DNA of 64,000 nucleotides. It comes from Entomortierella parvispora E1425. Lineage: Eukaryota; Fungi; Mortierellomycota. Within the stretch, counting starts at the first letter, position 1. Every line of letters starts with the position of its first letter. Positions 29,788-45,877 of the stretch are shown here, in pieces. Under the pieces are notes generated by a model. That model had not been told where the DNA came from, made no database searches, and saw only the letters and a list, made by a program, of their open reading frames with translations. The position numbers and the translations under genes were made by a program. The DNA is taken from the NCBI GenBank assembly GCA_020891255.1, contig BQFW01000008.1:2294001-2358000 (forward strand), in the 5' to 3' direction.

Positions 29788-29859
29788 AGCAGAAAACCGG
29801 GTTTGAACCGGTGACCTGCCGATCTGCAGTCGGCTGCTCTACCACTGAGCTATTCCTGC
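29788..29859 (-). tRNA. tRNA-Cys(GCA), copy 1
   Basis: GCAGGAATAGCTCAGTGGTAGAGCAGCCGACTGCAGATCGGCAGGTCACCGGTTCAAACCCGGTTTTCTGCT folds as a full cloverleaf with anticodon GCA, discriminator U73 and a downstream T-run. Confidence 0.95.
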
Positions 29860-36024: not shown

Positions 36025-36716
36025 CTAACCAGCGACCATGTCGTTTGTTAGTTTTCCACCGACCATGGGGGGACTTTCCTTTTTGGGCGTCTTATCCGTC
36101 GACCTTGACATCTCGTATCCGCCGACCATTAACCACCGACCCCTCTCTAATCCGCCGACCTTCTTGTCCCTCATCCGCCGACCACTCCGTTTCTTGACCA
36201 CCGACACTTCCGTAGCCGCCGACTTGTGAAATTTTGGGAGGGTTCAAACTTTCCAAAGGTTGCGAAGTAATTACTCTCTCCTGAACTTATGAAAAGTGGA
36301 TACTATGGATCTTATACCAATGTGTCTAGCAATATCTCCCTTGTAGCTTGGCCAGCTGGGTCCTTGAAACTTCTGTTGGTGACCGGCTGCTCGAAAGGAC
36401 AGCGGTTGGTGAGAAAGACACCGCCGGTCTATAAGTCACCGATCTAGATTTTTTTTTTTCGTTGACATGAACAAAGTACTTATGTTAGGTCGAGGACTAA
36501 GCGAGGGGTCATCCGCAGATAAAGATGAAGACAAGTCGGCGGATACGGCAATGGTTAGGTCGGTGGATTAGAGAGCAGTCGGTGGATGAGAGACAGTAAG
36601 GTCGGTGGTTTAGAGAGGGGTCGGTTTTTGATGTCAAGGTCGACGGATAGGACGCCCAAAAAGAAAAGTCCCCCATGGTCGGCGGATAACTAACCAACGA
36701 CTGAGTCGTTGGTTAG
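36025..36716. mobile_element. Non-autonomous foldback/MITE-like element with imperfect inverted arms of about 170-200 bp
   Basis: 36025-36200 is an imperfect reverse complement of 36530-36716. The arms carry repeated CC(A/G)CCGAC motifs and terminal hairpins. No TSD identified. Confidence 0.55.
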
Positions 36717-36740
36717 ATTCTTCGGAAAAACAAAACAAAA

Positions 36741-36812
36741 AGCAGAATTCCGGGTTTGAACCGGAGACCTGCCGATCTGCAGTCGGCTGCTCTACCGCTG
36801 AGCTAATCCTGC
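36741..36812 (-). tRNA. tRNA-Cys(GCA), copy 2
   Basis: GCAGGATTAGCTCAGCGGTAGAGCAGCCGACTGCAGATCGGCAGGTCTCCGGTTCAAACCCGGAATTCTGCT folds as a cloverleaf with anticodon GCA, U73 and a downstream T-run. Confidence 0.95.
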
Positions 36813-36819
36813 TTGTTGA

Positions 36820-37427
36820 TGTCGTGAATCAGACTGCTTTTATCCCCGCCAGCTCCGCGTCTGATCACATGACTTACGATCACCTGACCGCCGACACGCC
36901 TGATGAATGGACCCTTGTTGCGCGCCCTCATTGCACTTGTGCCGCGCGTCATCGTCGTTGACTATCACCAGGTCGACTACCCTCAACCGTGTATACTCAC
37001 GAACGGAGCATTTCATGTTTCTCCGACATTAACCTACCAACCGTTGCCAATCAAAAGCTTGTCTCCACGCCGGTCGACCAAGCTCTTTGAAACCTCGGAC
37101 GTTAGGGCCCCTATTCCAGAATAGTCATAAGCCCTTCACTATTTATTTCCATAGTGTCAGCAGTATAGTCTCACTTCACTACCTTCAGTATATAAGTAGC
37201 TCTGTATCGAGACTTAGAACGGCATCCTTTCTTTGCCCTTCCATCTCGATTACAGGTAACCCTCTTGAGAACCCTATCAGTAGTAACACACAGAATATCT
37301 TATTAAACATATCCTTTCTTTGCCCTTCCATCTCGATTACAGTCAAGGTAGCTGACTGTGGTGCCCAGTGTAGAAGAACACGCTCGACACACCCTAAGGA
37401 TCAGTCGTGATACCGAGAGTCACGACA
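36820..37427 (+). repeat. 5' LTR (608 bp)
   Basis: No difference seen by eye from 42354-42961 (offset 5534). The ORF-track translations of the two copies are identical. Confidence 0.95.
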
Positions 37428-37431
37428 AATT

Positions 37432-37444
37432 TGGTAGCAAAGGA
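37432..37444 (+). other. Primer-binding site TGGTAGCAAAGGA
   Basis: 4 nt after the LTR. It is complementary to a tRNA ending GCUACCA (U72, A73), consistent with initiator tRNA-Met. Confidence 0.7.
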
Positions 37445-37577
37445 CAGTAGTAGTCCTACCGCCACGCCCATTCAAAGGACAGTAGCAGTCCTACCGCCAC
37501 GCCCATCCAAAGGACAGTAGCAGTCCTACCGCCACGCCCATCCAAAGGACAGTAGTAGTCCTACCGCCACGCCCATT
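37438..37577 (+). repeat. Four tandem 35-bp repeats in the retroelement leader
   Basis: CAAAGGACAGTAG(T/C)AGTCCTACCGCCACGCCCAT(T/C) x4. Confidence 0.95.
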
Positions 37578-37613
37578 CAAGACGACCACCTTCCCTACCC
37601 ACTTCCTTACATC

Positions 37614-38951
37614 ATGAATCAACATCAACACAACTTCGACGACGATATTGACGATGAACCCAACACGTCAAGCTATCACGCCGCCTCCACCTTCACCGTT
37701 CCCGAACCTGTGATCCACAATGATCGTCCCAAAAAGAACCTTTTGCCCTCGGATCATGAAACTTTCAATGGCACCTGCTCCCACCACGAGGCCCGAGCAT
37801 GGTTGCTACAGACAGAGTTGATTGCAGACATCAGTGAGATTCCTAGACCGAAATGGCCCAGAGCCGCGATTGCCAAGCTTCGAGGTGACGCAAGAGTCTG
37901 GGGCCTGAATTACAACTCACTCCACACCAATGCCACGTGGGACACTTTCTCAGCCGCCTTTTTAAGTCAGTTCAGCTCAGAAGACTTGGAAGAGACCCTT
38001 CGCAACGAACTCGATAGTGTTGTCTGGGAAAAGACAGACACCCCCAACACCTTCTTCCACCGTTTTCAGTTTGCTTTGATGCCTCTTGGTACCAATGTAT
38101 CTGAAGGAGAAAAAGTACACGTCTTCAAGACCCGAAGTCCACAATTTTTGCGAAAATTTCTGATCGAACACCAAGTCAAAACCTGGCAACAAGTCCGCCA
38201 ACACTGTGAAATCCGAACAGAGATGAGCACAAGCCTTGGTATCATTTCCCAATCCGCGCAGAACCGAATCAACCAAGCCAGACAAACGCCGCCGTCTCGC
38301 CCTTTTGTTGCTCCATCACGCTTTGGTTCCCCAAGACTTTTCCAACACCACGCTGCTGCAACAGCCCCGCCCCCTCGTCCCTCTCACATTACTGGAAACC
38401 CCACTACTGGTTTTTCAACTGGAAAACGCGTTAGTTTCTCTGGTCATCCGTTTTCACGCCCTCCAGATCGACGAGACAGCACCCAAAACCAAAATCAAAG
38501 TCAAGGTCGTCGATCTTCGATGGATATGGACGTTGATGTGTTCAACATCGAGTGCCACAATTGCGGAGACAATCACAAGGCCGCAGAATGCCCCAAGCCG
38601 CAAACTTGTTATAACTGTGGACAGCGAGGACACTACAAACGCGACTGCCCTCAAGGAGGACAAAACCAAGGACGACCACAACGAAGGAATCGCCCAAACG
38701 TGAACATCAACATGACCCATATCGATCCACAAGATTTCAAGCCCGAAACTTGCCCATTGATGGTCGTACCCCTCTACGTCGACGGTTGGCAATTCGACGC
38801 CCTTTTTGATAACGGCGCCAACGTCAACGTTATTTCTTCTCGTGCCCTCGAAGTTATCCGTGAAGAATCCCCGGAATCCATCCTCGATGAAAAACGAATC
38901 TATGAGCCGACCCCTGTACGAACAGCCCATGCAGGGAGACCTAGGTGCTAA
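37614..38951 (+). CDS. gag: Gag plus N-terminal half of the aspartic protease
   Basis: Retrotransposon-gag-like core (AIAKLRGDARVWG), zinc knuckles CHNCGDNHKAAEC and CYNCGQRGHYKRDC, and protease motif ALFDNGANVNVIS. Confidence 0.9.
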   Translation: MNQHQHNFDDDIDDEPNTSSYHAASTFTVPEPVIHNDRPKKNLLPSDHETFNGTCSHHEARAWLLQTELIADISEIPRPKWPRAAIAKLRGDARVWGLNYNSLHTNATWDTFSAAFLSQFSSEDLEETLRNELDSVVWEKTDTPNTFFHRFQFALMPLGTNVSEGEKVHVFKTRSPQFLRKFLIEHQVKTWQQVRQHCEIRTEMSTSLGIISQSAQNRINQARQTPPSRPFVAPSRFGSPRLFQHHAAATAPPPRPSHITGNPTTGFSTGKRVSFSGHPFSRPPDRRDSTQNQNQSQGRRSSMDMDVDVFNIECHNCGDNHKAAECPKPQTCYNCGQRGHYKRDCPQGGQNQGRPQRRNRPNVNINMTHIDPQDFKPETCPLMVVPLYVDGWQFDALFDNGANVNVISSRALEVIREESPESILDEKRIYEPTPVRTAHAGRPRC

Positions 38952-41900
38952 GGCACTAGGCGAAGTCATCCTTCGAGTTGTTATTGGAGAACACACCTGC
39001 CGTTTCACAGCCACGGTTGTTCCCGACCTAGCTCACGATGTTTTCATTGGACTTCCATGGATGTTCCGCTATAAACCTCAAATCAATTGGGATCGCTACT
39101 CATTGACTTGGCAAGTCAATGGCCGAAAACACGAAGCCATCGCCAGATCTCAGCCCGCCAGTACCCTTCTGCAGAACGAACAGGTACCTGAACTTGCATA
39201 TGTGCAGACGAACGCACAGCGGTTCTTACACACCATGGCCGCCGATGATACACAAGAAGCAGGAATCGTTTGGTTAATGAAAACCCACGTTCCAGAACAC
39301 ACCCGAGCAGAAGAGCTCATGACCAACCCGGACCTGACAGTAGAACAGCAAGCTCAAATCGATGAGATAGTGAAGGAGTACCAGCAGGATGTATTCGCTC
39401 CACTCTCAGAGATGCCACCAGCCCGTCCCGGTTTCGATCACCAAATCCCCACTGGAGTAACAAGTCCTGTGGTCAAGAAGATATATAAGATGTCACCCCT
39501 CGAGCTCAAGACTCTCAAAGAACAGTTGGATGAGCTGTTACGGTTGGGGTACATCCAGCCCTCAACGTCGCCGTGGGCCGCACCAGTCCTGTTCGTCAAG
39601 AAGAAAGATGGAACATTGAGACTGTGCATCGACTATCGTGGACTCAACGCCGTCACGATCAAGAACAAGTATTTTCTCCCGCACACCGATGAATTTTTCG
39701 ATCGCATGCGAGGAGCCCGTTATTTCAGCAAGTTGGATCTCCAGCAGGGATATCATCAACTTCAAGTTGCAGAAGAGGACAGACCCAAGACAGCGTTCTC
39801 TACCCGATATGGACACTACGAGTACTGTGTCATGGCTTTTGGTCTTACCAACGCGCCCGCGTCGTTTCAAGCCTTCATGAATACGATTTTCAGTAAAGAG
39901 TTGGATCAGTTCGTTGTTGTCTACCTCGATGACATCCTGATCTACTCCAAGACTTTCGAAGAACACTTGAAGCACATCCGAACAGTGCTATCAACGCTGC
40001 GAAAACATCACCTACATGCCAAGCAAAGCAAATGTGCGTTTGGATTATCCAGCATCACCTTCGTCGGACATGTGATATCCTACGATGGAATTCAAGTGGA
40101 TCCAGCCAAGGTCGCAGTTGTCAAGAACTGGCCCACCCCAACCAACGTACAAGAGCTTCGTTCATTCATTGGATTTGTGAACTACCATCGCCGTCATATT
40201 TTCCACCATGCCGAAGTCACTGCTTGTCTTACAGACTTGTTGACCACTGGTCCAGGCCCAAACAAAGGAAAGTTACGACCCGTGCCTACTTGGGGCCCAG
40301 TTCAACAAGCCGCTTTCGATGGAATCAAAGAACTTCTAGCGACTACCCCTGTATTGTGCCTTGGACACCCCGATGAGCCGTACTATATGGAAACCGATGC
40401 ATCCGACATTGCCACAGGAGGAGTCCTTTATCAGATGCACGAAGGCAAAAGACACCCAGTTGCCTATGAGTCACGAAAACTTAAGCCAGCCGAGAAGAAC
40501 TACCCGGTCCATGAGAAGGAACTCCTCGCCATTGTTCACGCATGCAGAGCATGGCGCACGTTTATTCTTGGCGCCCCCGAAAACGTGGTCTACACTGACC
40601 ATGCAAGTCTACGATTTTTGTTGACCCAGCCACACCTGAGCCCGAGAATGACCCGTTGGGTTGAATTTTTGGCCCCCTACAACCTGTCGATCCAGTATAA
40701 GGCAGGAGCCACCAACATCGCTGCAGATGCGCTTTCCAGATTGCAAGTCAACAATGTGACAGCAGGACGTCACATCGACACTTGGGATTGGCCGTTGCTT
40801 GTCCCTGCATTTCTGGATGATGGTTCTTTTCCGCCCCATACCGATGGAGACACCAAGAAGAGAGTCCGCAAGGAGGCTCATAACTTCACGACTGATGACG
40901 ACGAATTGCGCTACATGGTTGAAGGAAGAGCAGTTCCCTTCGTTCCGTTTGCAGAGCGCGCAGATCGTCTCATTGAGTTGCACACCGACATTGGACATCT
41001 TGGAGAGTCTGGAACGTTTGATTTGGCCAAGACTCGCATGTGGTGGCCCAGTCTTCGAGCAGATATCAAAGCAGTAGTACGTGAATGCAAGCCGTGTCAA
41101 TTGGTCAAGCCCGGTGGTGACCGCTCTGTTGCACCGTTGCATCCATTGGCGCCAGCACGTCCGTTTGAGCGCTGGGGAATTGATTTTATTGGTCGCATGC
41201 CAGCCACCAAGAAAGGAAACCGTTGGATCATTACCGCAATCGACCATGCCACGAACTGGCCGATCGCAAGAGCCTTGCCAGAAGCAACCGCCGACGCCGT
41301 TGCTACTTTTCTCTATGAAGAGATCGTCTTACAGTTTGGCTGCCCTAGCGAGATCGTTAGCGACCGAGGAGCCAACTTCATGTCTGACGTTCTTCAACGC
41401 TATTTGGAGAAGCTGCACATCAAACACAAGGCTACGTCTGCTTACCATCCAAGGTCGAATGGAAAGTGTGAGCGTCTCAATGGTGTTATCGGACACATGT
41501 TGAGCAAGTATGTGGGTACACACATCCACAGCTGGGATCAGTACCTGCACCAGAGTCTGTTCGCTTGTCGCGTACACATCTCTCAGCGAACCAAGGTCAG
41601 CCCATTTCAACTTGTTTATGGACTTGAACCCCGTTTGCCGCAAGATCCAGTACGCCCATTCTTGTTTGATTTTCAAGATCAAGACGATTTTGCAGAACAT
41701 CGTCGCAAGACTTTTCGAGAAATCGACGCCCTCCGAGAAAAGCACCTGCAGGCCCAGCAGACCGCCGCAGATGATATGGCCGCACACCATGAAGAGACAC
41801 ACACGGTCACCGATCATAAGTTCGCAGTTGGTGATTTTGTCCTGGTCAAGAACTTCGGCCGTACGAAGCTTCAACCCCATTTTTATGGCCCGTTGGAAGT

Positions 41901-42495
41901 GATCCGTATTACGCCCTTGTCGACTTATCAGCTCCGCTTGGGAGATGGTGAGTTGAAGACGGACTTAGTACACCAAGACCGTCTTAAGCGTGCTTATCCG
42001 CCAGATGAAGCATCTGCACGCCGTGCTTGGGTCACTAAGACAAAGCACACCATGGAGCAAGCCAACGACAACTCTGACGATGGTCTTCCAATTGAAAGCC
42101 GCACTGAGGAGGAACAGCGCGTGGAGGAGGCCCTCGCTCTTAGAACCGCCAATGAAGATTACCTTGCCCGTCGCGATCAACTTGGCACTTACGAACCGCC
42201 TATGATGGGTTCCGCCGCTGAAGCTGCCCGCGTGTACAGACAGGCACTTGCTGCTTCTGCCCCGAAGCCTCGTCGCCGTGGCCAACGTACTCGCGAACCC
42301 AGAGTCAATCAGTTGCAGGCAGGCCGAGGACGGCCTGAAGCCTGTGGGGGGAGTGTCGTGAATCAGACTGCTTTTATCCCCGCCAGCTCCGCGTCTGATC
42401 ACATGACTTACGATCACCTGACCGCCGACACGCCTGATGAATGGACCCTTGTTGCGCGCCCTCATTGCACTTGTGCCGCGCGTCATCGTCGTTGA
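38930..42495 (+). CDS. pol: Pol (C-terminal protease, RT, RNase H, integrase), in the +1 frame relative to gag
   Basis: DVFIGLPW, SPWAAPVLFVKKKDGTLRLCIDYRGLN, YLDD, ETDAS, integrase H-H-C-C, WGIDF, SDRG, CERLN and GP(L) module. The open frame runs 142 bp into the 3' LTR. The start given is the approximate frame-switch point. Confidence 0.95.
42346..42353 (+). other. Polypurine tract GGGGGGAG
   Basis: Immediately precedes the TG of the 3' LTR. Confidence 0.85.
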
Positions 42496-42961
42496 CTATC
42501 ACCAGGTCGACTACCCTCAACCGTGTATACTCACGAACGGAGCATTTCATGTTTCTCCGACATTAACCTACCAACCGTTGCCAATCAAAAGCTTGTCTCC
42601 ACGCCGGTCGACCAAGCTCTTTGAAACCTCGGACGTTAGGGCCCCTATTCCAGAATAGTCATAAGCCCTTCACTATTTATTTCCATAGTGTCAGCAGTAT
42701 AGTCTCACTTCACTACCTTCAGTATATAAGTAGCTCTGTATCGAGACTTAGAACGGCATCCTTTCTTTGCCCTTCCATCTCGATTACAGGTAACCCTCTT
42801 GAGAACCCTATCAGTAGTAACACACAGAATATCTTATTAAACATATCCTTTCTTTGCCCTTCCATCTCGATTACAGTCAAGGTAGCTGACTGTGGTGCCC
42901 AGTGTAGAAGAACACGCTCGACACACCCTAAGGATCAGTCGTGATACCGAGAGTCACGACA
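42354..42961 (+). repeat. 3' LTR (608 bp)
   Basis: Matches the 5' LTR and is followed by the TTGA TSD. Confidence 0.95.
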
Positions 42962-43042
42962 TTGAAGCTAAAACTTATCTTCAATAATATTCAGCGGTTA
43001 GTGAAGTCACGTGACGGAATCACGTACGTTATTAAAAAAGAC

Positions 43043-43326
43043 GGTGACGAGCCCTGGCGCCGACCAGCGCTTACTGGCTTGTGTGCGTGGCCAGGTTCAC
43101 TTATCGACATTAGAAAAATGGGGAAGATCCATTTTTTGTAACATTTTACTCTTCTTTATTACACGGTGACGAGCCGTGGCATTTGTTGCGCGGGGATCCG
43201 GGGTCTTTGTTCGTCTGGACCACGCGGCTTTGCTCAGGTTGTAGATAGTTTGGTCTCGCACCTCACTTCTTTGGCTCGACATAGCAAATAAAATGTTGCA
43301 AAAAAAAAAAAAAAAAAAAAAAAAAA
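43043..43326 (+). repeat. ~280-bp A-tailed repeat unit; diverged direct copy of ~43327-43730
   Basis: Shared CCGACCAGCGCTTACTGG..GATCCATTTTTTGTAAC..GCAAATAAAATGTTG. This copy ends in a 27-nt A run. Confidence 0.8.
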
Positions 43327-43524
43327 GGTGACGAGCCCTGGCACCGTGGGAACAATGCCTCTGGTACGATCTTACCACCAGACACTTGCCAATGCGGAAA
43401 GCCTAACACCGACCACCATCAAGGCCTCTGCCCTGGTGCCCAAGACAATCCCACGCTGGCCGACCAGCGCTTACTGGCTTGTGTGCGTGGCCAGGTTCAC
43501 TTATCGACATTAGAAAAGATGGGG

Positions 43525-45877
43525 AAGATCCATTTTTTGTAACATTTTACTCTTCTTTATTACACGGCGACGAGTCGTGGTACTTGTTGCGCGGGGATCC
43601 GGGGTCTTTTGTTCGTCCAAACCACGCGGCTTTCCCTCAGGTTGTAGATAGTTTGGTCCCATACTTCACTTCCTTTGGCTCGACACAGCAAATAAAATGT
43701 TGTAAAAAAAATAAAAATAAAAATAAAAACTGAAAAAAAGCTGTCAATGAAAGGGAAAGGGAGAAGACCGCGGACAAATACCAAATGCACATGAATCTCT
43801 TCATCAAAACTCCCGTTTAATAAAACAACAACAATTGCTACTATTATTAATGGGAGGTGCGTGGAGTGTTCAAGAAGGGACTGGGGTCCAAGCTGTTGAT
43901 GAAGTGAATCAATTGATATTGTCTTGGCAACGCAATTGGAGTTATCTTGTGTGTTTGGTCGGCCTGTTACCACCGCGACTAAGGGGCATGTGTGGTGGCA
44001 AAAAGGGTCATTGGACGCGATCCTCTTAGCTTAACAATCAGTCACCGTGTCGCTGGATCCGCAACAGTTGTTGAAGGTGCCAAGGTTGCCGTGAGTACCG
44101 GCAAACGCGCAATCGTCCCCAGTCCAGTTTCCACCCGAGTTGGCACAGCAGTTTCTGCTAGCTCCGAAGTCGATGTTGGCTCCTTGCCAGCACTTGCAGG
44201 CCATCGCCGCGGCCATCTGAGCGCACACAATCATGATAATGGAGAGCTTCATATTGGATTCTTGAGAGTTGAGGAGAGGCGTGGGTAAGGACTCGGAGTG
44301 CCGTTGCAGGTCTGGAGTGTTGAGAGGGAGGATCAGATGTGTTTGGGTGCAAGATGGTGGGTATACGCGACCTCTTTATATACAGGAGAAGGGAGGCCAG
44401 ATTTGAACTTACGAGAGAAACAAATAGGAAATACCTCGTTTATGGGGGAAGGAACGAAGAGATGGTTATGCGCTATCCGGTTGCCGAAAGGGTCGTGGGA
44501 ATGCAGACAATGAGAAAAAAAAAAGATGGGCGCCAACTCTGCATCTCCGCTGCAGAGAGAAAATGGATCTTTGAATGCAATTCATGGTGTGACAAAACGT
44601 CGAGCACCATGGACCAAGAAGACCAAATTCAGAAGAGTATTAGGTTGCACAAAATATAAGAACCCAGGAAAGGATTTTTGTGAACCCTGCCCGATTGGGC
44701 TGGGGCAGAGAGAGAAACAAAGGTGCTACATACATGTACTGTGGCGATCCTGCGTGATTGGGCGCTAGGACACCATTGGCTCCTGCGCGATTGGGCTCGG
44801 GCGTTGACGCGATGTGACGTTGTCACCAGCCTGCTGGTTCGTGGGTGTTTGGCTCGGTGCGGGAAGTACAGTTACGGTGTCCTAGCTCCATTGAGTGCGT
44901 CAATGGCAGCACATGTTCTGCAATGATCGTCCTCAATGCAAAGGCCGTCGCCCTCAACGTAGTGCGAGGGGCTAGCTGTGTCTTTAGAGGCGCTCATGGA
45001 TGGAGTGGTGGAGTTGCGTGAGGGAATGGGCAATTCTTCTCAGAATGTGCTCGCTAAGCTGCATCATGCAGGAGGTTTGTCCCCTTGCCGTTGAAAAAAC
45101 CGAAACGGCCAGGGTACCTCCCTGCATTATGCGATTCTGCCTTGTCTGACCGTGACACTGACCCACTGACCTAGCCGTTGACACCGCCCGGAATGGAGAT
45201 TCTTTTTATCCCGCAGGTATGCAATCTCTTCATTGGCTCCTGCGCGATTGGGCTTGGGCTTGGGCGTTGACGCCCGGTGTTTGGTTCGGTGCGGGAAGTA
45301 CGGTGTCAATATTCAGTTCGTTCAGCTCCCTGTCTAGCTCCTCGTCGTCCATGTCGAGTGCGTCAGTGGCAGCACCTGTTCTATGCTGATCGTCCTCAAT
45401 GTAGAGGCCGTCGTCCTCAACGTAGTGCGAGGGGCTAGCTGTGTCTTTAGAGGCACTCATGGATGGAGTGGTGGAGTTGTGTGTGGGAATGGGCAATCCT
45501 TCTCAGAATGTGCTCGCTAAGCTGCATCATGCAGGAGGTCTGTCCCCTTGCCGTTGAAAAAACCGAAACGGCCAGGGTACCTCCCTGCATTCTGTGATTC
45601 TGCCTTGTCTGACCGTGACACTGACCCACTGACCTGGCCGTTGACACCGCCCGGAATGGAGACTCTTTTTGTCCCGCAGGTATGCAGTCTCTTCATTGGT
45701 TCCTGCGCGATTGGGCTCGGACTTGGGCGTTGACGCTGGGTATTTGGTTCGGTGCGGGATGATCGAGGGGGGCAGGGAAATGTCTTTTTGTCGTCTCATT
45801 GAATTGCTTGTCGTCCGATTCTGTTATTTGTCGTCCGATGTGGGCTCACTGTCGCCCGATTACTTACCTTAACTTCC
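43525..45877. repeat. Left arm (~2.35 kb) of a large inverted repeat
   Basis: Reverse complement of 47861-50021 plus 55411-55600. Mirrored ORFs have coordinate sums of 93737-93738. Confidence 0.95.
44031..44252 (-). CDS. Small secreted cysteine-rich protein (73 aa, 8 Cys after the signal peptide), left copy
   Basis: Hydrophobic signal peptide MKLSIIMIVCAQMAAAMA, then C-x-C-x13-CC-x11-C-x14-CC-x8-C. TATATAAA lies ~130 bp upstream (44375-44382). Confidence 0.8.
   Translation of the reverse strand: MKLSIIMIVCAQMAAAMACKCWQGANIDFGASRNCCANSGGNWTGDDCAFAGTHGNLGTFNNCCGSSDTVTDC

What the first reader, a model, noticed from the sequence alone, without database searches (positions are those of the whole stretch)
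36812..42965. Young Gypsy element inserted 7 bp upstream of a tRNA gene: candidate Pol III-targeted retrotransposon
Seen: the LTR starts at 36820 and the mature tRNA 5' end is at 36812. The TSD is 4 bp (TTGA, positions -4 to -7). The LTRs look identical, the ORFs are intact, and the element is transcribed away from the tRNA. Established: yeast Ty3 and Dictyostelium DGLT-A target tRNA upstream regions through Pol III factors; Ty3 makes 5-bp TSDs and usually sits further from the mature tRNA. I know of no described equivalent in this fungal group. Inference: an independent or related tRNA-targeting system. One insertion cannot prove targeting. The LTR end now replaces the native TFIIIB-binding region.
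Basis: partly seen in the sequence, partly recalled or inferred. Interest (0 to 1): 0.82.

Follow-up and report, generated by a model that had tools for sequence, protein, structure and literature searches.

The report
tRNA-targeting Gypsy retrotransposon in Mortierella-like fungus
A very young Ty3/Gypsy retrotransposon family of the soil fungus Entomortierella parvispora sits 7-35 bp upstream of a different tRNA gene at all 15 of its genomic sites, always pointing away from the gene, so it is a genuine tRNA-gene-targeting element in a fungal group where I found none described.

Summary
A 6,142-bp Ty3/Gypsy element (36820-42961, +) has two identical 608-bp LTRs and a 4-bp duplication (TTGA). 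It starts 7 bp from the 5' end of tRNA-Cys (36741-36812, -) and is transcribed away from it.

One correction: gag and pol are open but in different frames, because of one extra G at 38934-38936. Four of eight compared copies lack it and read gag-pol as one frame.

The targeting idea is strongly supported. The genome is Entomortierella parvispora by a 100% protein match. It holds 15 insertions of this family: 10 full-length, 4 solo LTRs and 1 fragment. Every one lies 7-35 bp (13 of 15 at 14-22 bp) upstream of a tRNA gene, 13 different anticodons in all. The 5' LTR always faces the tRNA.

A chromodomain-bearing Gypsy family in the same genome (at least 39 copies) shows no tRNA association.

The primer site matches initiator tRNA-Met. 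The integrase has no chromodomain; it ends in a roughly 90-residue predicted helical module found only in this lineage among 1.84 billion protein representatives.

Best reading: Ty3-like tethering to the Pol III initiation complex, with fixed orientation (opposite to Tj1) and a 4-bp duplication.

Other first-stage notes (s1-173322, s1-185132) flagged the same family elsewhere in this genome.

The parts
36741..36812 (-). tRNA-Cys(GCA) gene, the Pol III target. Its mature 5' end is at 36812.
   Evidence: ARAGORN, Rfam RF00005 at 65.6 bits, and the acceptor stem read.
36816..36819 (+). Left copy of the 4-bp target-site duplication, TTGA (positions -4 to -7 from the tRNA). In tRNA sense the 7-bp spacer reads TCAACAA.
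   Evidence: Sequence; same 4 bases at 42962-42965.
36820..37427 (+). 5' LTR, 608 bp, starting TGTCGTGA. It carries a TATA-like TATATAAG at 37189-37196 (inferred promoter). A contig of the own-strain run begins exactly at 36820.
   Evidence: table 8, record 1.
37432..37443 (+). Primer-binding site TGGTAGCAAAGG. It is 12 nt complementary to the 3' end plus CCA of the genome's initiator tRNA-Met.
   Evidence: The initiator tRNA-Met gene at L059:1448-1520 has A1:U72 and the GATCGAAAC T-loop.
37438..37577 (+). 35-bp tandem repeat in the leader, 4 units here and 3 in four other copies. It starts inside the primer-binding site.
   Evidence: (family D2).
37614..38951 (+). gag (445 aa) with two CCHC zinc knuckles. 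Its C-terminal end already encodes the start of the protease (DNGA motif).
38934..38936 (+). GGG run. One G is extra relative to four of the eight compared copies, and it puts pol in the +1 frame relative to gag in this copy.
   Evidence: Open frames of 1644-1657 aa in other copies. The collapsed contig of the own-strain run lacks the extra base (table 4).
38806..42495 (+). pol open frame (1229 aa): rest of protease, RT 39595-40077, RNase H 40291-40680, integrase zinc domain 40945-41112, integrase core 41155-41451. The frame runs 142 nt into the 3' LTR.
   Evidence: The best solved-structure match of the RT/RNase H part is Ty3 RT at 1.5e-77.
41836..41991 (+). Integrase C-terminal SH3-like barrel (GPY/F module).
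   Evidence: AlphaFold model strands 33-84, Foldseek match to the MLV, PFV and Ty3 integrase C-terminal domains, and weak Pfam hits to MLVIN_C and SH3_Tf2-1.
41995..42264 (+). Lineage-specific integrase C-terminal module of about 90 aa, predicted as three helices. Candidate targeting domain (inferred). A disordered basic tail follows at 42265-42492.
42346..42353 (+). Polypurine tract GGGGGGAG, abutting the 3' LTR.
   Evidence: Sequence.
42354..42961 (+). 3' LTR, 608 bp, identical to the 5' LTR.
42962..42965 (+). Right copy of the target-site duplication, TTGA.

Best explanation
This is one copy of a recently active Ty3/Gypsy (Metaviridae) LTR retrotransposon family of Entomortierella parvispora. 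The family integrates specifically into a narrow window just upstream of tRNA genes.

Most likely mechanism: the intasome is tethered to the RNA polymerase III pre-initiation complex on the tRNA gene. TFIIIB is the most likely partner, as for Ty3. It makes a 4-bp staggered cut next to the probable Pol III start site. The tether is asymmetric, so the U3 end of the 5' LTR always faces the tRNA gene.

The candidate tethering part is the lineage-specific helical module at the integrase C-terminus. It occupies the place that a chromodomain holds in chromoviruses and in Ty3.

Shown here: the insertion pattern, the orientation, the duplication length, the primer site, the youth of the family, and the absence of a chromodomain. 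Inferred: the protein partner, the role of the C-terminal module, and the position of the transcription start.
For: **Insertion pattern**
- The LTR search of the own genome scored all 25 candidates and gave 27 matches, which make 15 insertions.
- ARAGORN finds a tRNA gene next to the 5' LTR start of every insertion.
- After correcting tRNA ends by the canonical acceptor stem, the gaps are 7, 14, 14, 14, 15, 15, 15, 16, 17, 17, 20, 20, 20, 22 and 35 bp.
- The target tRNAs cover 13 anticodons, and the flanks and duplications all differ, so the tRNA-plus-element unit was not copied.
- All 15 are divergent from the tRNA. A two-sided sign test gives about 6e-5.

**Chance**
- The genome paper reports 192 nuclear tRNA genes in 38.7 Mb (PMC8759367).
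- A random insertion lands within 35 bp upstream of one with probability about 1.7e-4. Fifteen of fifteen is about 1e-56 (my arithmetic).

**Target-site duplication**
- A perfect 4-bp duplication flanks 9 of 10 full-length copies.

**Youth**
- Six of eight compared copies have identical LTR pairs.
- The copies differ by under 0.5%.

**Control family**
- A related chromovirus family in the same genome has the same LTR terminus and the same primer site.
- It carries a Chromo domain (PF00385, E 3.6e-7) and has at least 39 near-identical copies.
- None of its 39 predicted LTR starts lies within 2 kb of the 59 nuclear tRNA genes listed. For this family, 5 of 15 lie within 36 bp of the same 59.

**Start-site motif**
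- The base pair next to the duplication on the tRNA side reads pyrimidine-A in tRNA sense in 12-13 of 15 sites (CATCAA in three). This looks like a Pol III start motif.
- It has no mirror image on the other side of the duplication.

**Integrase C-terminus**
- No chromodomain is found by Pfam even at E 10.
- The model shows an SH3-like barrel followed by three helices.
- The helical module is conserved in relatives of 52-77% identity.
- It is absent from 109 other Gypsy Pol proteins.
- In 1.84 billion protein representatives it matches only four proteins of this lineage plus one unassigned 252-aa protein; the other two hits look spurious.

**Precedents**
- Ty3 binds TFIIIB through its C-terminal domain and chromodomain (PMC8632968).
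- Tj1 integrates with fixed orientation (PMC4600332).
- DGLT-A lies 13-33 bp upstream of tRNA genes (PMC5911963).
Against: - All data are fixed genomic copies in one genome. No new integration was observed, so selection after integration could add to the pattern and to the orientation bias.
- No protein-protein contact was tested.
- Pol III start sites are not mapped in this species.
- The structural model rests on 11 sequences and has a mean pLDDT of 65.
- The role of the C-terminal module rests on position and conservation only.
- Close relatives in other organisms sit on short metagenome contigs without flanks, so I could not show that targeting is conserved beyond this genome.
- One full-length pair has non-matching flanks (GTGT against GGCG).
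Confidence: 0.85

Rival explanations
1. Integration is random or only weakly biased. The pattern arises because insertions elsewhere are removed by selection, leaving copies in harmless places next to tRNA genes.
For: Only fixed copies were seen. The genome is compact, with 11,641 genes in 38.7 Mb.
Against: - The copies are too young for such complete filtering: LTR pairs are identical and copies differ by under 0.5%.
- Selection would not give a 14-22 bp window, one orientation and 15 of 15 sites.
- A related family with at least 39 equally young copies persists away from tRNA genes.
Confidence: 0.03
2. The integrase recognises a DNA sequence or shape that happens to lie upstream of tRNA genes, for example the pyrimidine-A or CATCAA-like motif. 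No Pol III factor is contacted.
For: A recurrent T-G (in tRNA sense C-A) lies next to the duplication in 12-13 of 15 sites, and TTGATG in three.
Against: - Such a short, degenerate motif occurs many thousands of times in 39 Mb, yet no copy lies elsewhere.
- The duplicated bases themselves have no consensus.
- The motif is one-sided, as expected of a feature of the tRNA promoter rather than of a symmetric intasome.
Confidence: 0.07
3. Targeting uses another handle at tRNA genes: a Pol III subunit as for Ty1 (AC40), TFIIIC, or the nucleosome-free region. TFIIIB is not the partner.
For: The integrase ends in helices and a disordered basic tail. This resembles the short C-terminal targeting segment of Ty1 integrase (PMC10050235, abstract) more than the Ty3 chromodomain.
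Against: - Ty1-type targeting gives a periodic window of about 1 kb (PMC5911963), not 14-22 bp.
- The position at the presumed start site matches the downstream edge of TFIIIB, as for Ty3 and Tj1.
Confidence: 0.2

Closest known systems
Ty3 of Saccharomyces cerevisiae (Ty3/Gypsy, TFIIIB-tethered)
   Same: - Gypsy gene order.
- Primer is initiator tRNA-Met.
- Integrates a few bp from the presumed Pol III start, upstream of tRNA genes.
- No canonical chromodomain by sequence.
- pol is in the +1 frame in the window copy.
- Ty3 RT is the best solved-structure match of the RT/RNase H part.
   Different: - 4-bp, not 5-bp, duplication.
- One fixed orientation, whereas Ty3 inserts both ways.
- No second beta-barrel (the cryptic chromodomain of Ty3 integrase residues 446-511) after the C-terminal domain; three helices are predicted instead.
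- The integrase is no closer to Ty3 (4.7e-24) than to foamy virus integrase (1.1e-24).
- Half of the compared copies read gag-pol as one frame.
Tj1 of Schizosaccharomyces japonicus
   Same: - Gypsy element that integrates 1-10 bp upstream of tRNA start sites.
- One fixed orientation, described there as unique among LTR elements (PMC4600332).
   Different: [quoted passage not shown]
- Tj1 has a 5-bp duplication, self-priming and a gag stop codon.
- This family has a 4-bp duplication and a tRNA primer site.
DGLT-A of Dictyostelium discoideum
   Same: - Gypsy element without a chromodomain.
- Lies 13-33 bp upstream of the mature tRNA coding sequence, with a single gag-pol frame.
- Coexists with a chromodomain-bearing, cluster-forming relative (Skipper-1) and with tRNA-targeting non-LTR elements (TRE5). 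This genome shows the same trio.
   Different: - DGLT-A inserts in either orientation.
- It has no full-length copies left in D. discoideum, whereas this family is young and complete.
- The host is an amoebozoan, not a fungus.
Beta/Tca8 (Candida albicans) and Ylt1, Tyl3, Tyl6 (Yarrowia lipolytica)
   Same: Fungal Gypsy elements found 5-30 bp upstream of tRNA genes (table in PMC5911963).
   Different: All are from ascomycete yeasts. I did not compare their sequences or orientations here.

Membership tests
Ty3/Gypsy (Metaviridae) LTR retrotransposon | Two LTRs with TG...CA ends, flanked by a short target-site duplication | tested here: met
   608-bp identical LTRs running TGTCG...CGACA, with a TTGA duplication.
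Ty3/Gypsy (Metaviridae) LTR retrotransposon | Primer-binding site after the 5' LTR and polypurine tract before the 3' LTR | tested here: met
   A 12-nt match to initiator tRNA-Met at 37432-37443. GGGGGGAG at 42346-42353.
Ty3/Gypsy (Metaviridae) LTR retrotransposon | gag with zinc knuckle; pol in the order protease, RT, RNase H, integrase | tested here: met
   Pfam domains in that order. Ty3 RT is the best solved-structure match at 1.5e-77.
Pol III-upstream-targeting LTR elements (functional class: Ty3, Tj1, DGLT-A) | [quoted passage not shown] | tested here: met
   15 of 15 insertions lie 7-35 bp upstream of tRNA genes.
Pol III-upstream-targeting LTR elements (functional class: Ty3, Tj1, DGLT-A) | New integrations go to the same sites and depend on Pol III factors | not testable with these tools
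   Needs experiments.
Ty3 in the strict sense | 5-bp target-site duplication | tested here: not met
   4 bp in 9 of 10 full-length copies.
Ty3 in the strict sense | Chromodomain fold directly after the integrase C-terminal domain, contacting TFIIIB | tested here: not met
   No Chromo hit at E 10. The model shows helices after the barrel. Foldseek finds only the barrel. The model is of moderate confidence.
Ty3 in the strict sense | Insertion in both orientations | tested here: not met
   15 of 15 in one orientation.
Ty3 in the strict sense | Phylogenetic placement with Ty3 on RT/integrase | not tested
   Named reference sequences (Ty3, Tj1, DGLT-A) could not be obtained as sequences.
Chromoviruses | Chromodomain at the integrase C-terminus | tested here: not met
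   - Absent here and in all relatives of 52-77% identity.
- In a tree of 46 Pol proteins, this lineage falls in a chromodomain-less clade. That clade has SH3-aLRT-style support of 100 (SH-aLRT 100) and is apart from the chromovirus clade, which holds the genome's family B.
Tj1-like | [quoted passage not shown] | tested here: not met
   The orientation is fixed but opposite. There is a tRNA primer site and a 4-bp duplication.

The most novel reading that the evidence does not exclude
tRNA-upstream targeting was invented independently in an early-diverging fungus.

A lineage-restricted helical integrase C-terminal module, unrelated to the Ty3 chromodomain and to the Ty1 targeting segment, docks the intasome asymmetrically on the Pol III pre-initiation complex. 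This fixes the orientation opposite to that of Tj1.

Together with the poly(A)-tailed non-LTR elements about 80-100 bp upstream of the same tRNA genes and a chromodomain-bearing sister family in clusters, Entomortierella would reproduce the whole Dictyostelium arrangement by convergence.
Probability: 0.45. Interest if true: 0.7.

Novelty: new variant of a known kind. Interest (0 to 1): 0.56.

Why it matters
**Taxonomic reach.** Targeting of tRNA genes is the classic example of a mobile element choosing a safe place in a compact genome. Among fungi it was documented only in ascomycete yeasts; the other cases are amoebae. A clean, young, complete family in Mortierellomycota extends it to a distant fungal phylum.

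**Orientation.** This is a second natural case of fixed-orientation integration, mirror-imaged relative to Tj1. It can be used to ask how an intasome reads the polarity of the Pol III complex.

**A candidate domain.** The family points to a small, lineage-specific integrase module as a testable targeting domain.

**Practical uses.** The insertions can serve as markers of Pol III start sites in a species with no such data. The integrase module could inform site-directed integration tools.

Tried and rejected
**Flanks in other organisms.**
- The contigs of the closest relatives are element-only, with no flanks and no tRNA (P0005, P0002).
- A 39%-identical element on a 6.65-Mb contig (P0045) has no tRNA nearby.

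**Metagenome scan.** The scan with the family alignment picked patterns common to all Gypsy elements. It returned relatives whose best segments were mostly 30-39% identical (up to 50% on short pieces), with no tRNA in 80 loci. It is not a test of this lineage.

**First control.** No tRNA lay within 1.5 kb of the RT-integrase hits of other Gypsy families. This proved uninformative, because those loci do not reach the 5' LTRs. I replaced it with the coordinate comparison.

**More genome sequence.** I stitched copies from overlapping loci already held, without conflicts.

**Initiator tRNA.** A first pattern for the initiator tRNA found nothing. A looser one found it.

**Reads.**
- No run on record as RNA holds the stretch, so expression is untested.
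- Other isolates under the same species label show no LTR at 80% likeness. This means either absence or strong divergence. An empty-site test was impossible within the 6,000-letter limit.

**Other.**
- The bacterial promoter and terminator scan is irrelevant here.
- I rejected segmental duplication of a tRNA-plus-element unit, because the tRNAs, flanks and duplications all differ.
Full report
**1. What is in the window**

ARAGORN finds tRNA-Cys(GCA) at 36740-36813 on the minus strand. The Rfam tRNA model places it at 36741-36812. The canonical acceptor stem followed by U8 agrees with a mature 5' end at 36812.

Two direct repeats, 36820-37427 and 42354-42961, are 608 bp long and 100% identical. 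They begin TGTCGTGA and end TCACGACA. TTGA lies immediately outside both (36816-36819 and 42962-42965).

Between the LTRs lie, in order:
- a 12-nt primer-binding site, TGGTAGCAAAGG (37432-37443);
- four 35-bp tandem repeats;
- gag (37614-38951; Retrotrans_gag and two CCHC knuckles);
- pol (38806-42495; protease, RVT_1, RNase H, integrase zinc domain, integrase core);
- a polypurine tract, GGGGGGAG, abutting the 3' LTR.

The primer site is complementary to the 3' end plus CCA of a tRNA-Met gene. That gene has the hallmarks of a eukaryotic initiator (A1:U72 and a GATCGAAAC T-loop) and is present in at least five copies in the genome.

The element is on the + strand and the tRNA on the - strand, with the 5' LTR next to the tRNA 5' end.

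**2. One correction**

gag and pol overlap in different frames, with pol at +1. An alignment of eight full-length copies shows that the window copy and three others have GGG at 38934-38936. The other four have GG and read gag-pol as a single frame of about 1,650 aa.

The collapsed contig of the own-strain sequencing run also lacks the extra base. I cannot tell whether the extra G is a defect, a site of +1 frameshifting as in Ty1 and Ty3, or in part a polishing artefact. The assembly was made from Nanopore reads polished with short reads (PMC8759367).

**3. Whose genome**

The pol product is 100% identical to a protein that NCBI names from Entomortierella parvispora.

The published E1425 assembly has 19 nuclear contigs plus a mitochondrial genome, 38.7 Mb in total, and 192 nuclear tRNA genes. 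The window's genome has 20 contigs and 38.9 Mb.

**4. The family test**

A search of the whole genome with the LTR scored all 25 candidates and gave 27 matches of 95-100% identity. They resolve into 10 full-length elements, 4 solo LTRs and 1 LTR fragment. Two of the full-length elements carry a nested insertion of another Gypsy family.

ARAGORN on the loci finds a tRNA gene next to the start of the 5' LTR, or of the solo LTR, in every case.

| Measure | Result |
|---|---|
| Gaps from tRNA 5' end to LTR (tRNA ends corrected by eye to the canonical acceptor stem) | 7, 14, 14, 14, 15, 15, 15, 16, 17, 17, 20, 20, 20, 22, 35 bp |
| Median gap | 16 bp |
| Window copy | 7 bp, the extreme |
| Target tRNAs | Cys, Asn (2), Met (2), His, Ser, Leu-AAG, Leu-CAA, Lys, Gly-UCC, Gly-GCC, Glu (2), Asp |
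| Orientation | 15 of 15 divergent from the tRNA |
| Perfect 4-bp duplication | 9 of 10 full-length copies |

The flanks and duplications all differ, so these are independent events.

With 192 tRNA genes, the 35 bp upstream of them make up about 1.7e-4 of the genome. Fifteen of fifteen by chance is about 1e-56, and the orientation alone about 6e-5 (my arithmetic).

**5. Age**

Six of eight compared copies have identical LTR pairs, and two differ by one position. Copies differ from each other at about 45 single positions in 6.1 kb, plus a few indels. One of these is the gain or loss of one 35-bp leader repeat.

One copy has the same three deletions in both of its LTRs, so that variant itself transposed. 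The pattern of shared differences does not fit a single tree, as expected if co-packaged RNAs recombine (inference).

In three other isolates filed under the same species label, contigs match the tRNA gene but not the LTR at 80% likeness. This is consistent with a strain-limited family, or with strong divergence of those isolates.

**6. A control inside the same genome**

Next to one solo LTR lies the 5' end of a second Gypsy family, which I call B. Its LTR begins with the same TGTCGTGA. Its primer site also matches initiator tRNA-Met.

Its pol is 38-39% identical to this family's. It ends in an SH3-like domain followed by a Chromo domain (PF00385, E 3.6e-7). At least 39 near-identical copies exist, many of them in clusters.

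I predicted the LTR start of each B copy and compared it with the 59 nuclear tRNA genes listed:

| Family | LTR starts compared | Close to a listed tRNA gene |
|---|---|---|
| B (chromovirus) | 39 | 0 within 2 kb |
| This family | 15 | 5 within 36 bp |

Five of 15 is the share expected if all 15 are at tRNA genes and the list covers about a third of them. If B behaved like this family, about 12 hits would be expected. So proximity to tRNA genes is a property of this family, not of Gypsy elements or of this genome in general.

**7. Where exactly it integrates**

I aligned the 15 sites on the junction. The two bases next to the duplication on the tRNA side are T then G or A in 12-13 of 15 sites. 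In tRNA sense this reads pyrimidine-A; three sites read CATCAA, and the window reads TCAACAA. The mirror position on the other side shows no such signal.

Pol III usually starts at a purine after a pyrimidine (general knowledge). I therefore infer that the cut is set against the start site, as for Ty3 and Tj1. On that reading, the spread of 7-35 bp reflects different leader lengths. This is not shown, because start sites are unmapped in this species.

**8. The integrase**

The RT/RNase H part matches Ty3 RT best among solved structures (1.5e-77), as any Gypsy element would. The integrase matches Ty3 (4.7e-24) no better than foamy virus integrase (1.1e-24).

After the catalytic core come a linker helix and an SH3-like barrel. 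The barrel matches the MLV, PFV and Ty3 C-terminal domains.

Ty3 has a cryptic chromodomain at this point, which contacts Brf1 and the target DNA (PMC8632968). Here the model predicts three helices instead; the best has pLDDT 84-92. A disordered basic tail follows. Pfam finds no chromodomain even at E 10.

The helical module is conserved in metagenomic relatives of 52-77% identity. A profile of it finds none of 109 other Gypsy Pol proteins. In a full scan of 1.84 billion protein representatives:
- four of the seven hits are proteins or C-terminal fragments of this lineage;
- one is an unassigned 252-aa protein;
- two look spurious.

In a tree of 46 Pol proteins, this lineage is one clade (support 100). 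It sits inside a chromodomain-less clade together with elements named from Mucor, Absidia and Ascosphaera. That clade is apart from the chromovirus clade, which holds family B. The tree has no Ty3, Tj1 or DGLT-A, because I could not bring those sequences into the session. Independent origin therefore remains open.

**9. Comparison with what is known**

The 2018 review lists these Pol III-targeting Gypsy elements:
- fungal, all from ascomycete yeasts: Ty3, Ty3p, Tj1, beta/Tca8, Tyl3, Ylt1, Tyl6;
- from Dictyostelium: DGLT-A and Skipper-2.

Full-text searches found no report for Mortierellomycota or Mucoromycota. The library does not cover all journals.

The new family works like Ty3 and Tj1 in position and like DGLT-A in distance and gene layout. 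It fails defining features of each:
- 4-bp instead of 5-bp duplication;
- fixed orientation, unlike Ty3 and DGLT-A;
- orientation opposite to Tj1;
- a tRNA primer, unlike Tj1;
- no chromodomain.

I therefore file it as a new variant of a known kind.

**10. Context seen in passing**

Just beyond the 3' LTR, at 43040-43730, lie two tandem units of about 270-400 bp. Each ends in a poly(A) run. Before the Gypsy insertion they began about 80 bp upstream of the same tRNA-Cys, head to head with it.

The same sequence lies beyond the 3' LTR of two other copies of this family. Other first-stage notes on this genome describe tRNA-associated non-LTR elements about 92-107 bp upstream of tRNA genes.

So the genome appears to hold three kinds of element: a tRNA-targeting Gypsy family, tRNA-associated poly(A) elements, and a clustered chromovirus. 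This is the arrangement known from Dictyostelium.

**11. Verdict**

The partner protein and the targeting domain are inferred.

It is interesting to people who study mobile elements and gives a good experimental handle, but the principle is already known.

Noticed in passing
window 43040-43730: Two tandem units of about 270-400 bp, 88-100% alike, each ending in a poly(A) run (26 A at 43300-43326). Before the Gypsy insertion they began about 80 bp upstream of tRNA-Cys, head to head with it. They look like 3' parts of a tRNA-associated non-LTR retroelement. The same sequence lies beyond the 3' LTR of two other copies (L005, L011).
   Followed up: partly
L022:2104-3599 and L050:802-4299 (own genome, other contigs): A second Gypsy family (B) with a Chromo domain at the integrase end and at least 39 near-identical copies, often clustered. 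It is not at tRNA genes, yet it has the same LTR terminus (TGTCGTGA) and an extended primer site for initiator tRNA-Met. One copy abuts a solo LTR of the tRNA-targeting family, and two others are nested inside full-length copies.
   Followed up: partly
window 37438-37577: A 35-bp tandem repeat in the leader that begins inside the primer-binding site. There are 4 units in four copies and 3 in four others, and each unit can form a short hairpin. Its function is unknown.
   Followed up: partly
window 36300-36730: The DNA on the 3' side of tRNA-Cys is itself repetitive. It shows summed contig depth as high as the multi-copy LTR bins (900-1,350) in the own-strain run, and pieces of it occur in another isolate. 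It may be another element associated with the downstream side of tRNA genes.
   Followed up: no
window 36839-36846 (inside the 5' LTR): In tRNA sense the LTR end carries GGATAAAAG. This stretch comes to lie about 27-47 bp upstream of the mature tRNA end in the various copies, roughly where the unoccupied tRNA-Cys paralogue (29788-29859) has an AT-rich stretch. The LTR may supply a TATA-like element to the displaced tRNA promoter (speculation).
   Followed up: no
window 38812-38823 (gag frame): The protease active-site motif reads D-N-G-A instead of the usual D-T/S-G-A. It is conserved in all relatives of 52-77% identity (consensus).
   Followed up: no
L024/L023 (own genome, contig 7 copy): Both LTRs of this copy carry the same deletions of 9, 12 and 87 bp. 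The 87-bp deletion lies between two 33-bp direct repeats inside the LTR. So a shortened-LTR variant has itself transposed.
   Followed up: partly
L016 and L008 (solo LTRs): Two 'solo' LTRs keep 2-4 bases of the internal region (AA, AATT) after the LTR end, and their flanks are not a clean 4-bp duplication. They may stem from internal deletion rather than LTR-LTR recombination.
   Followed up: partly
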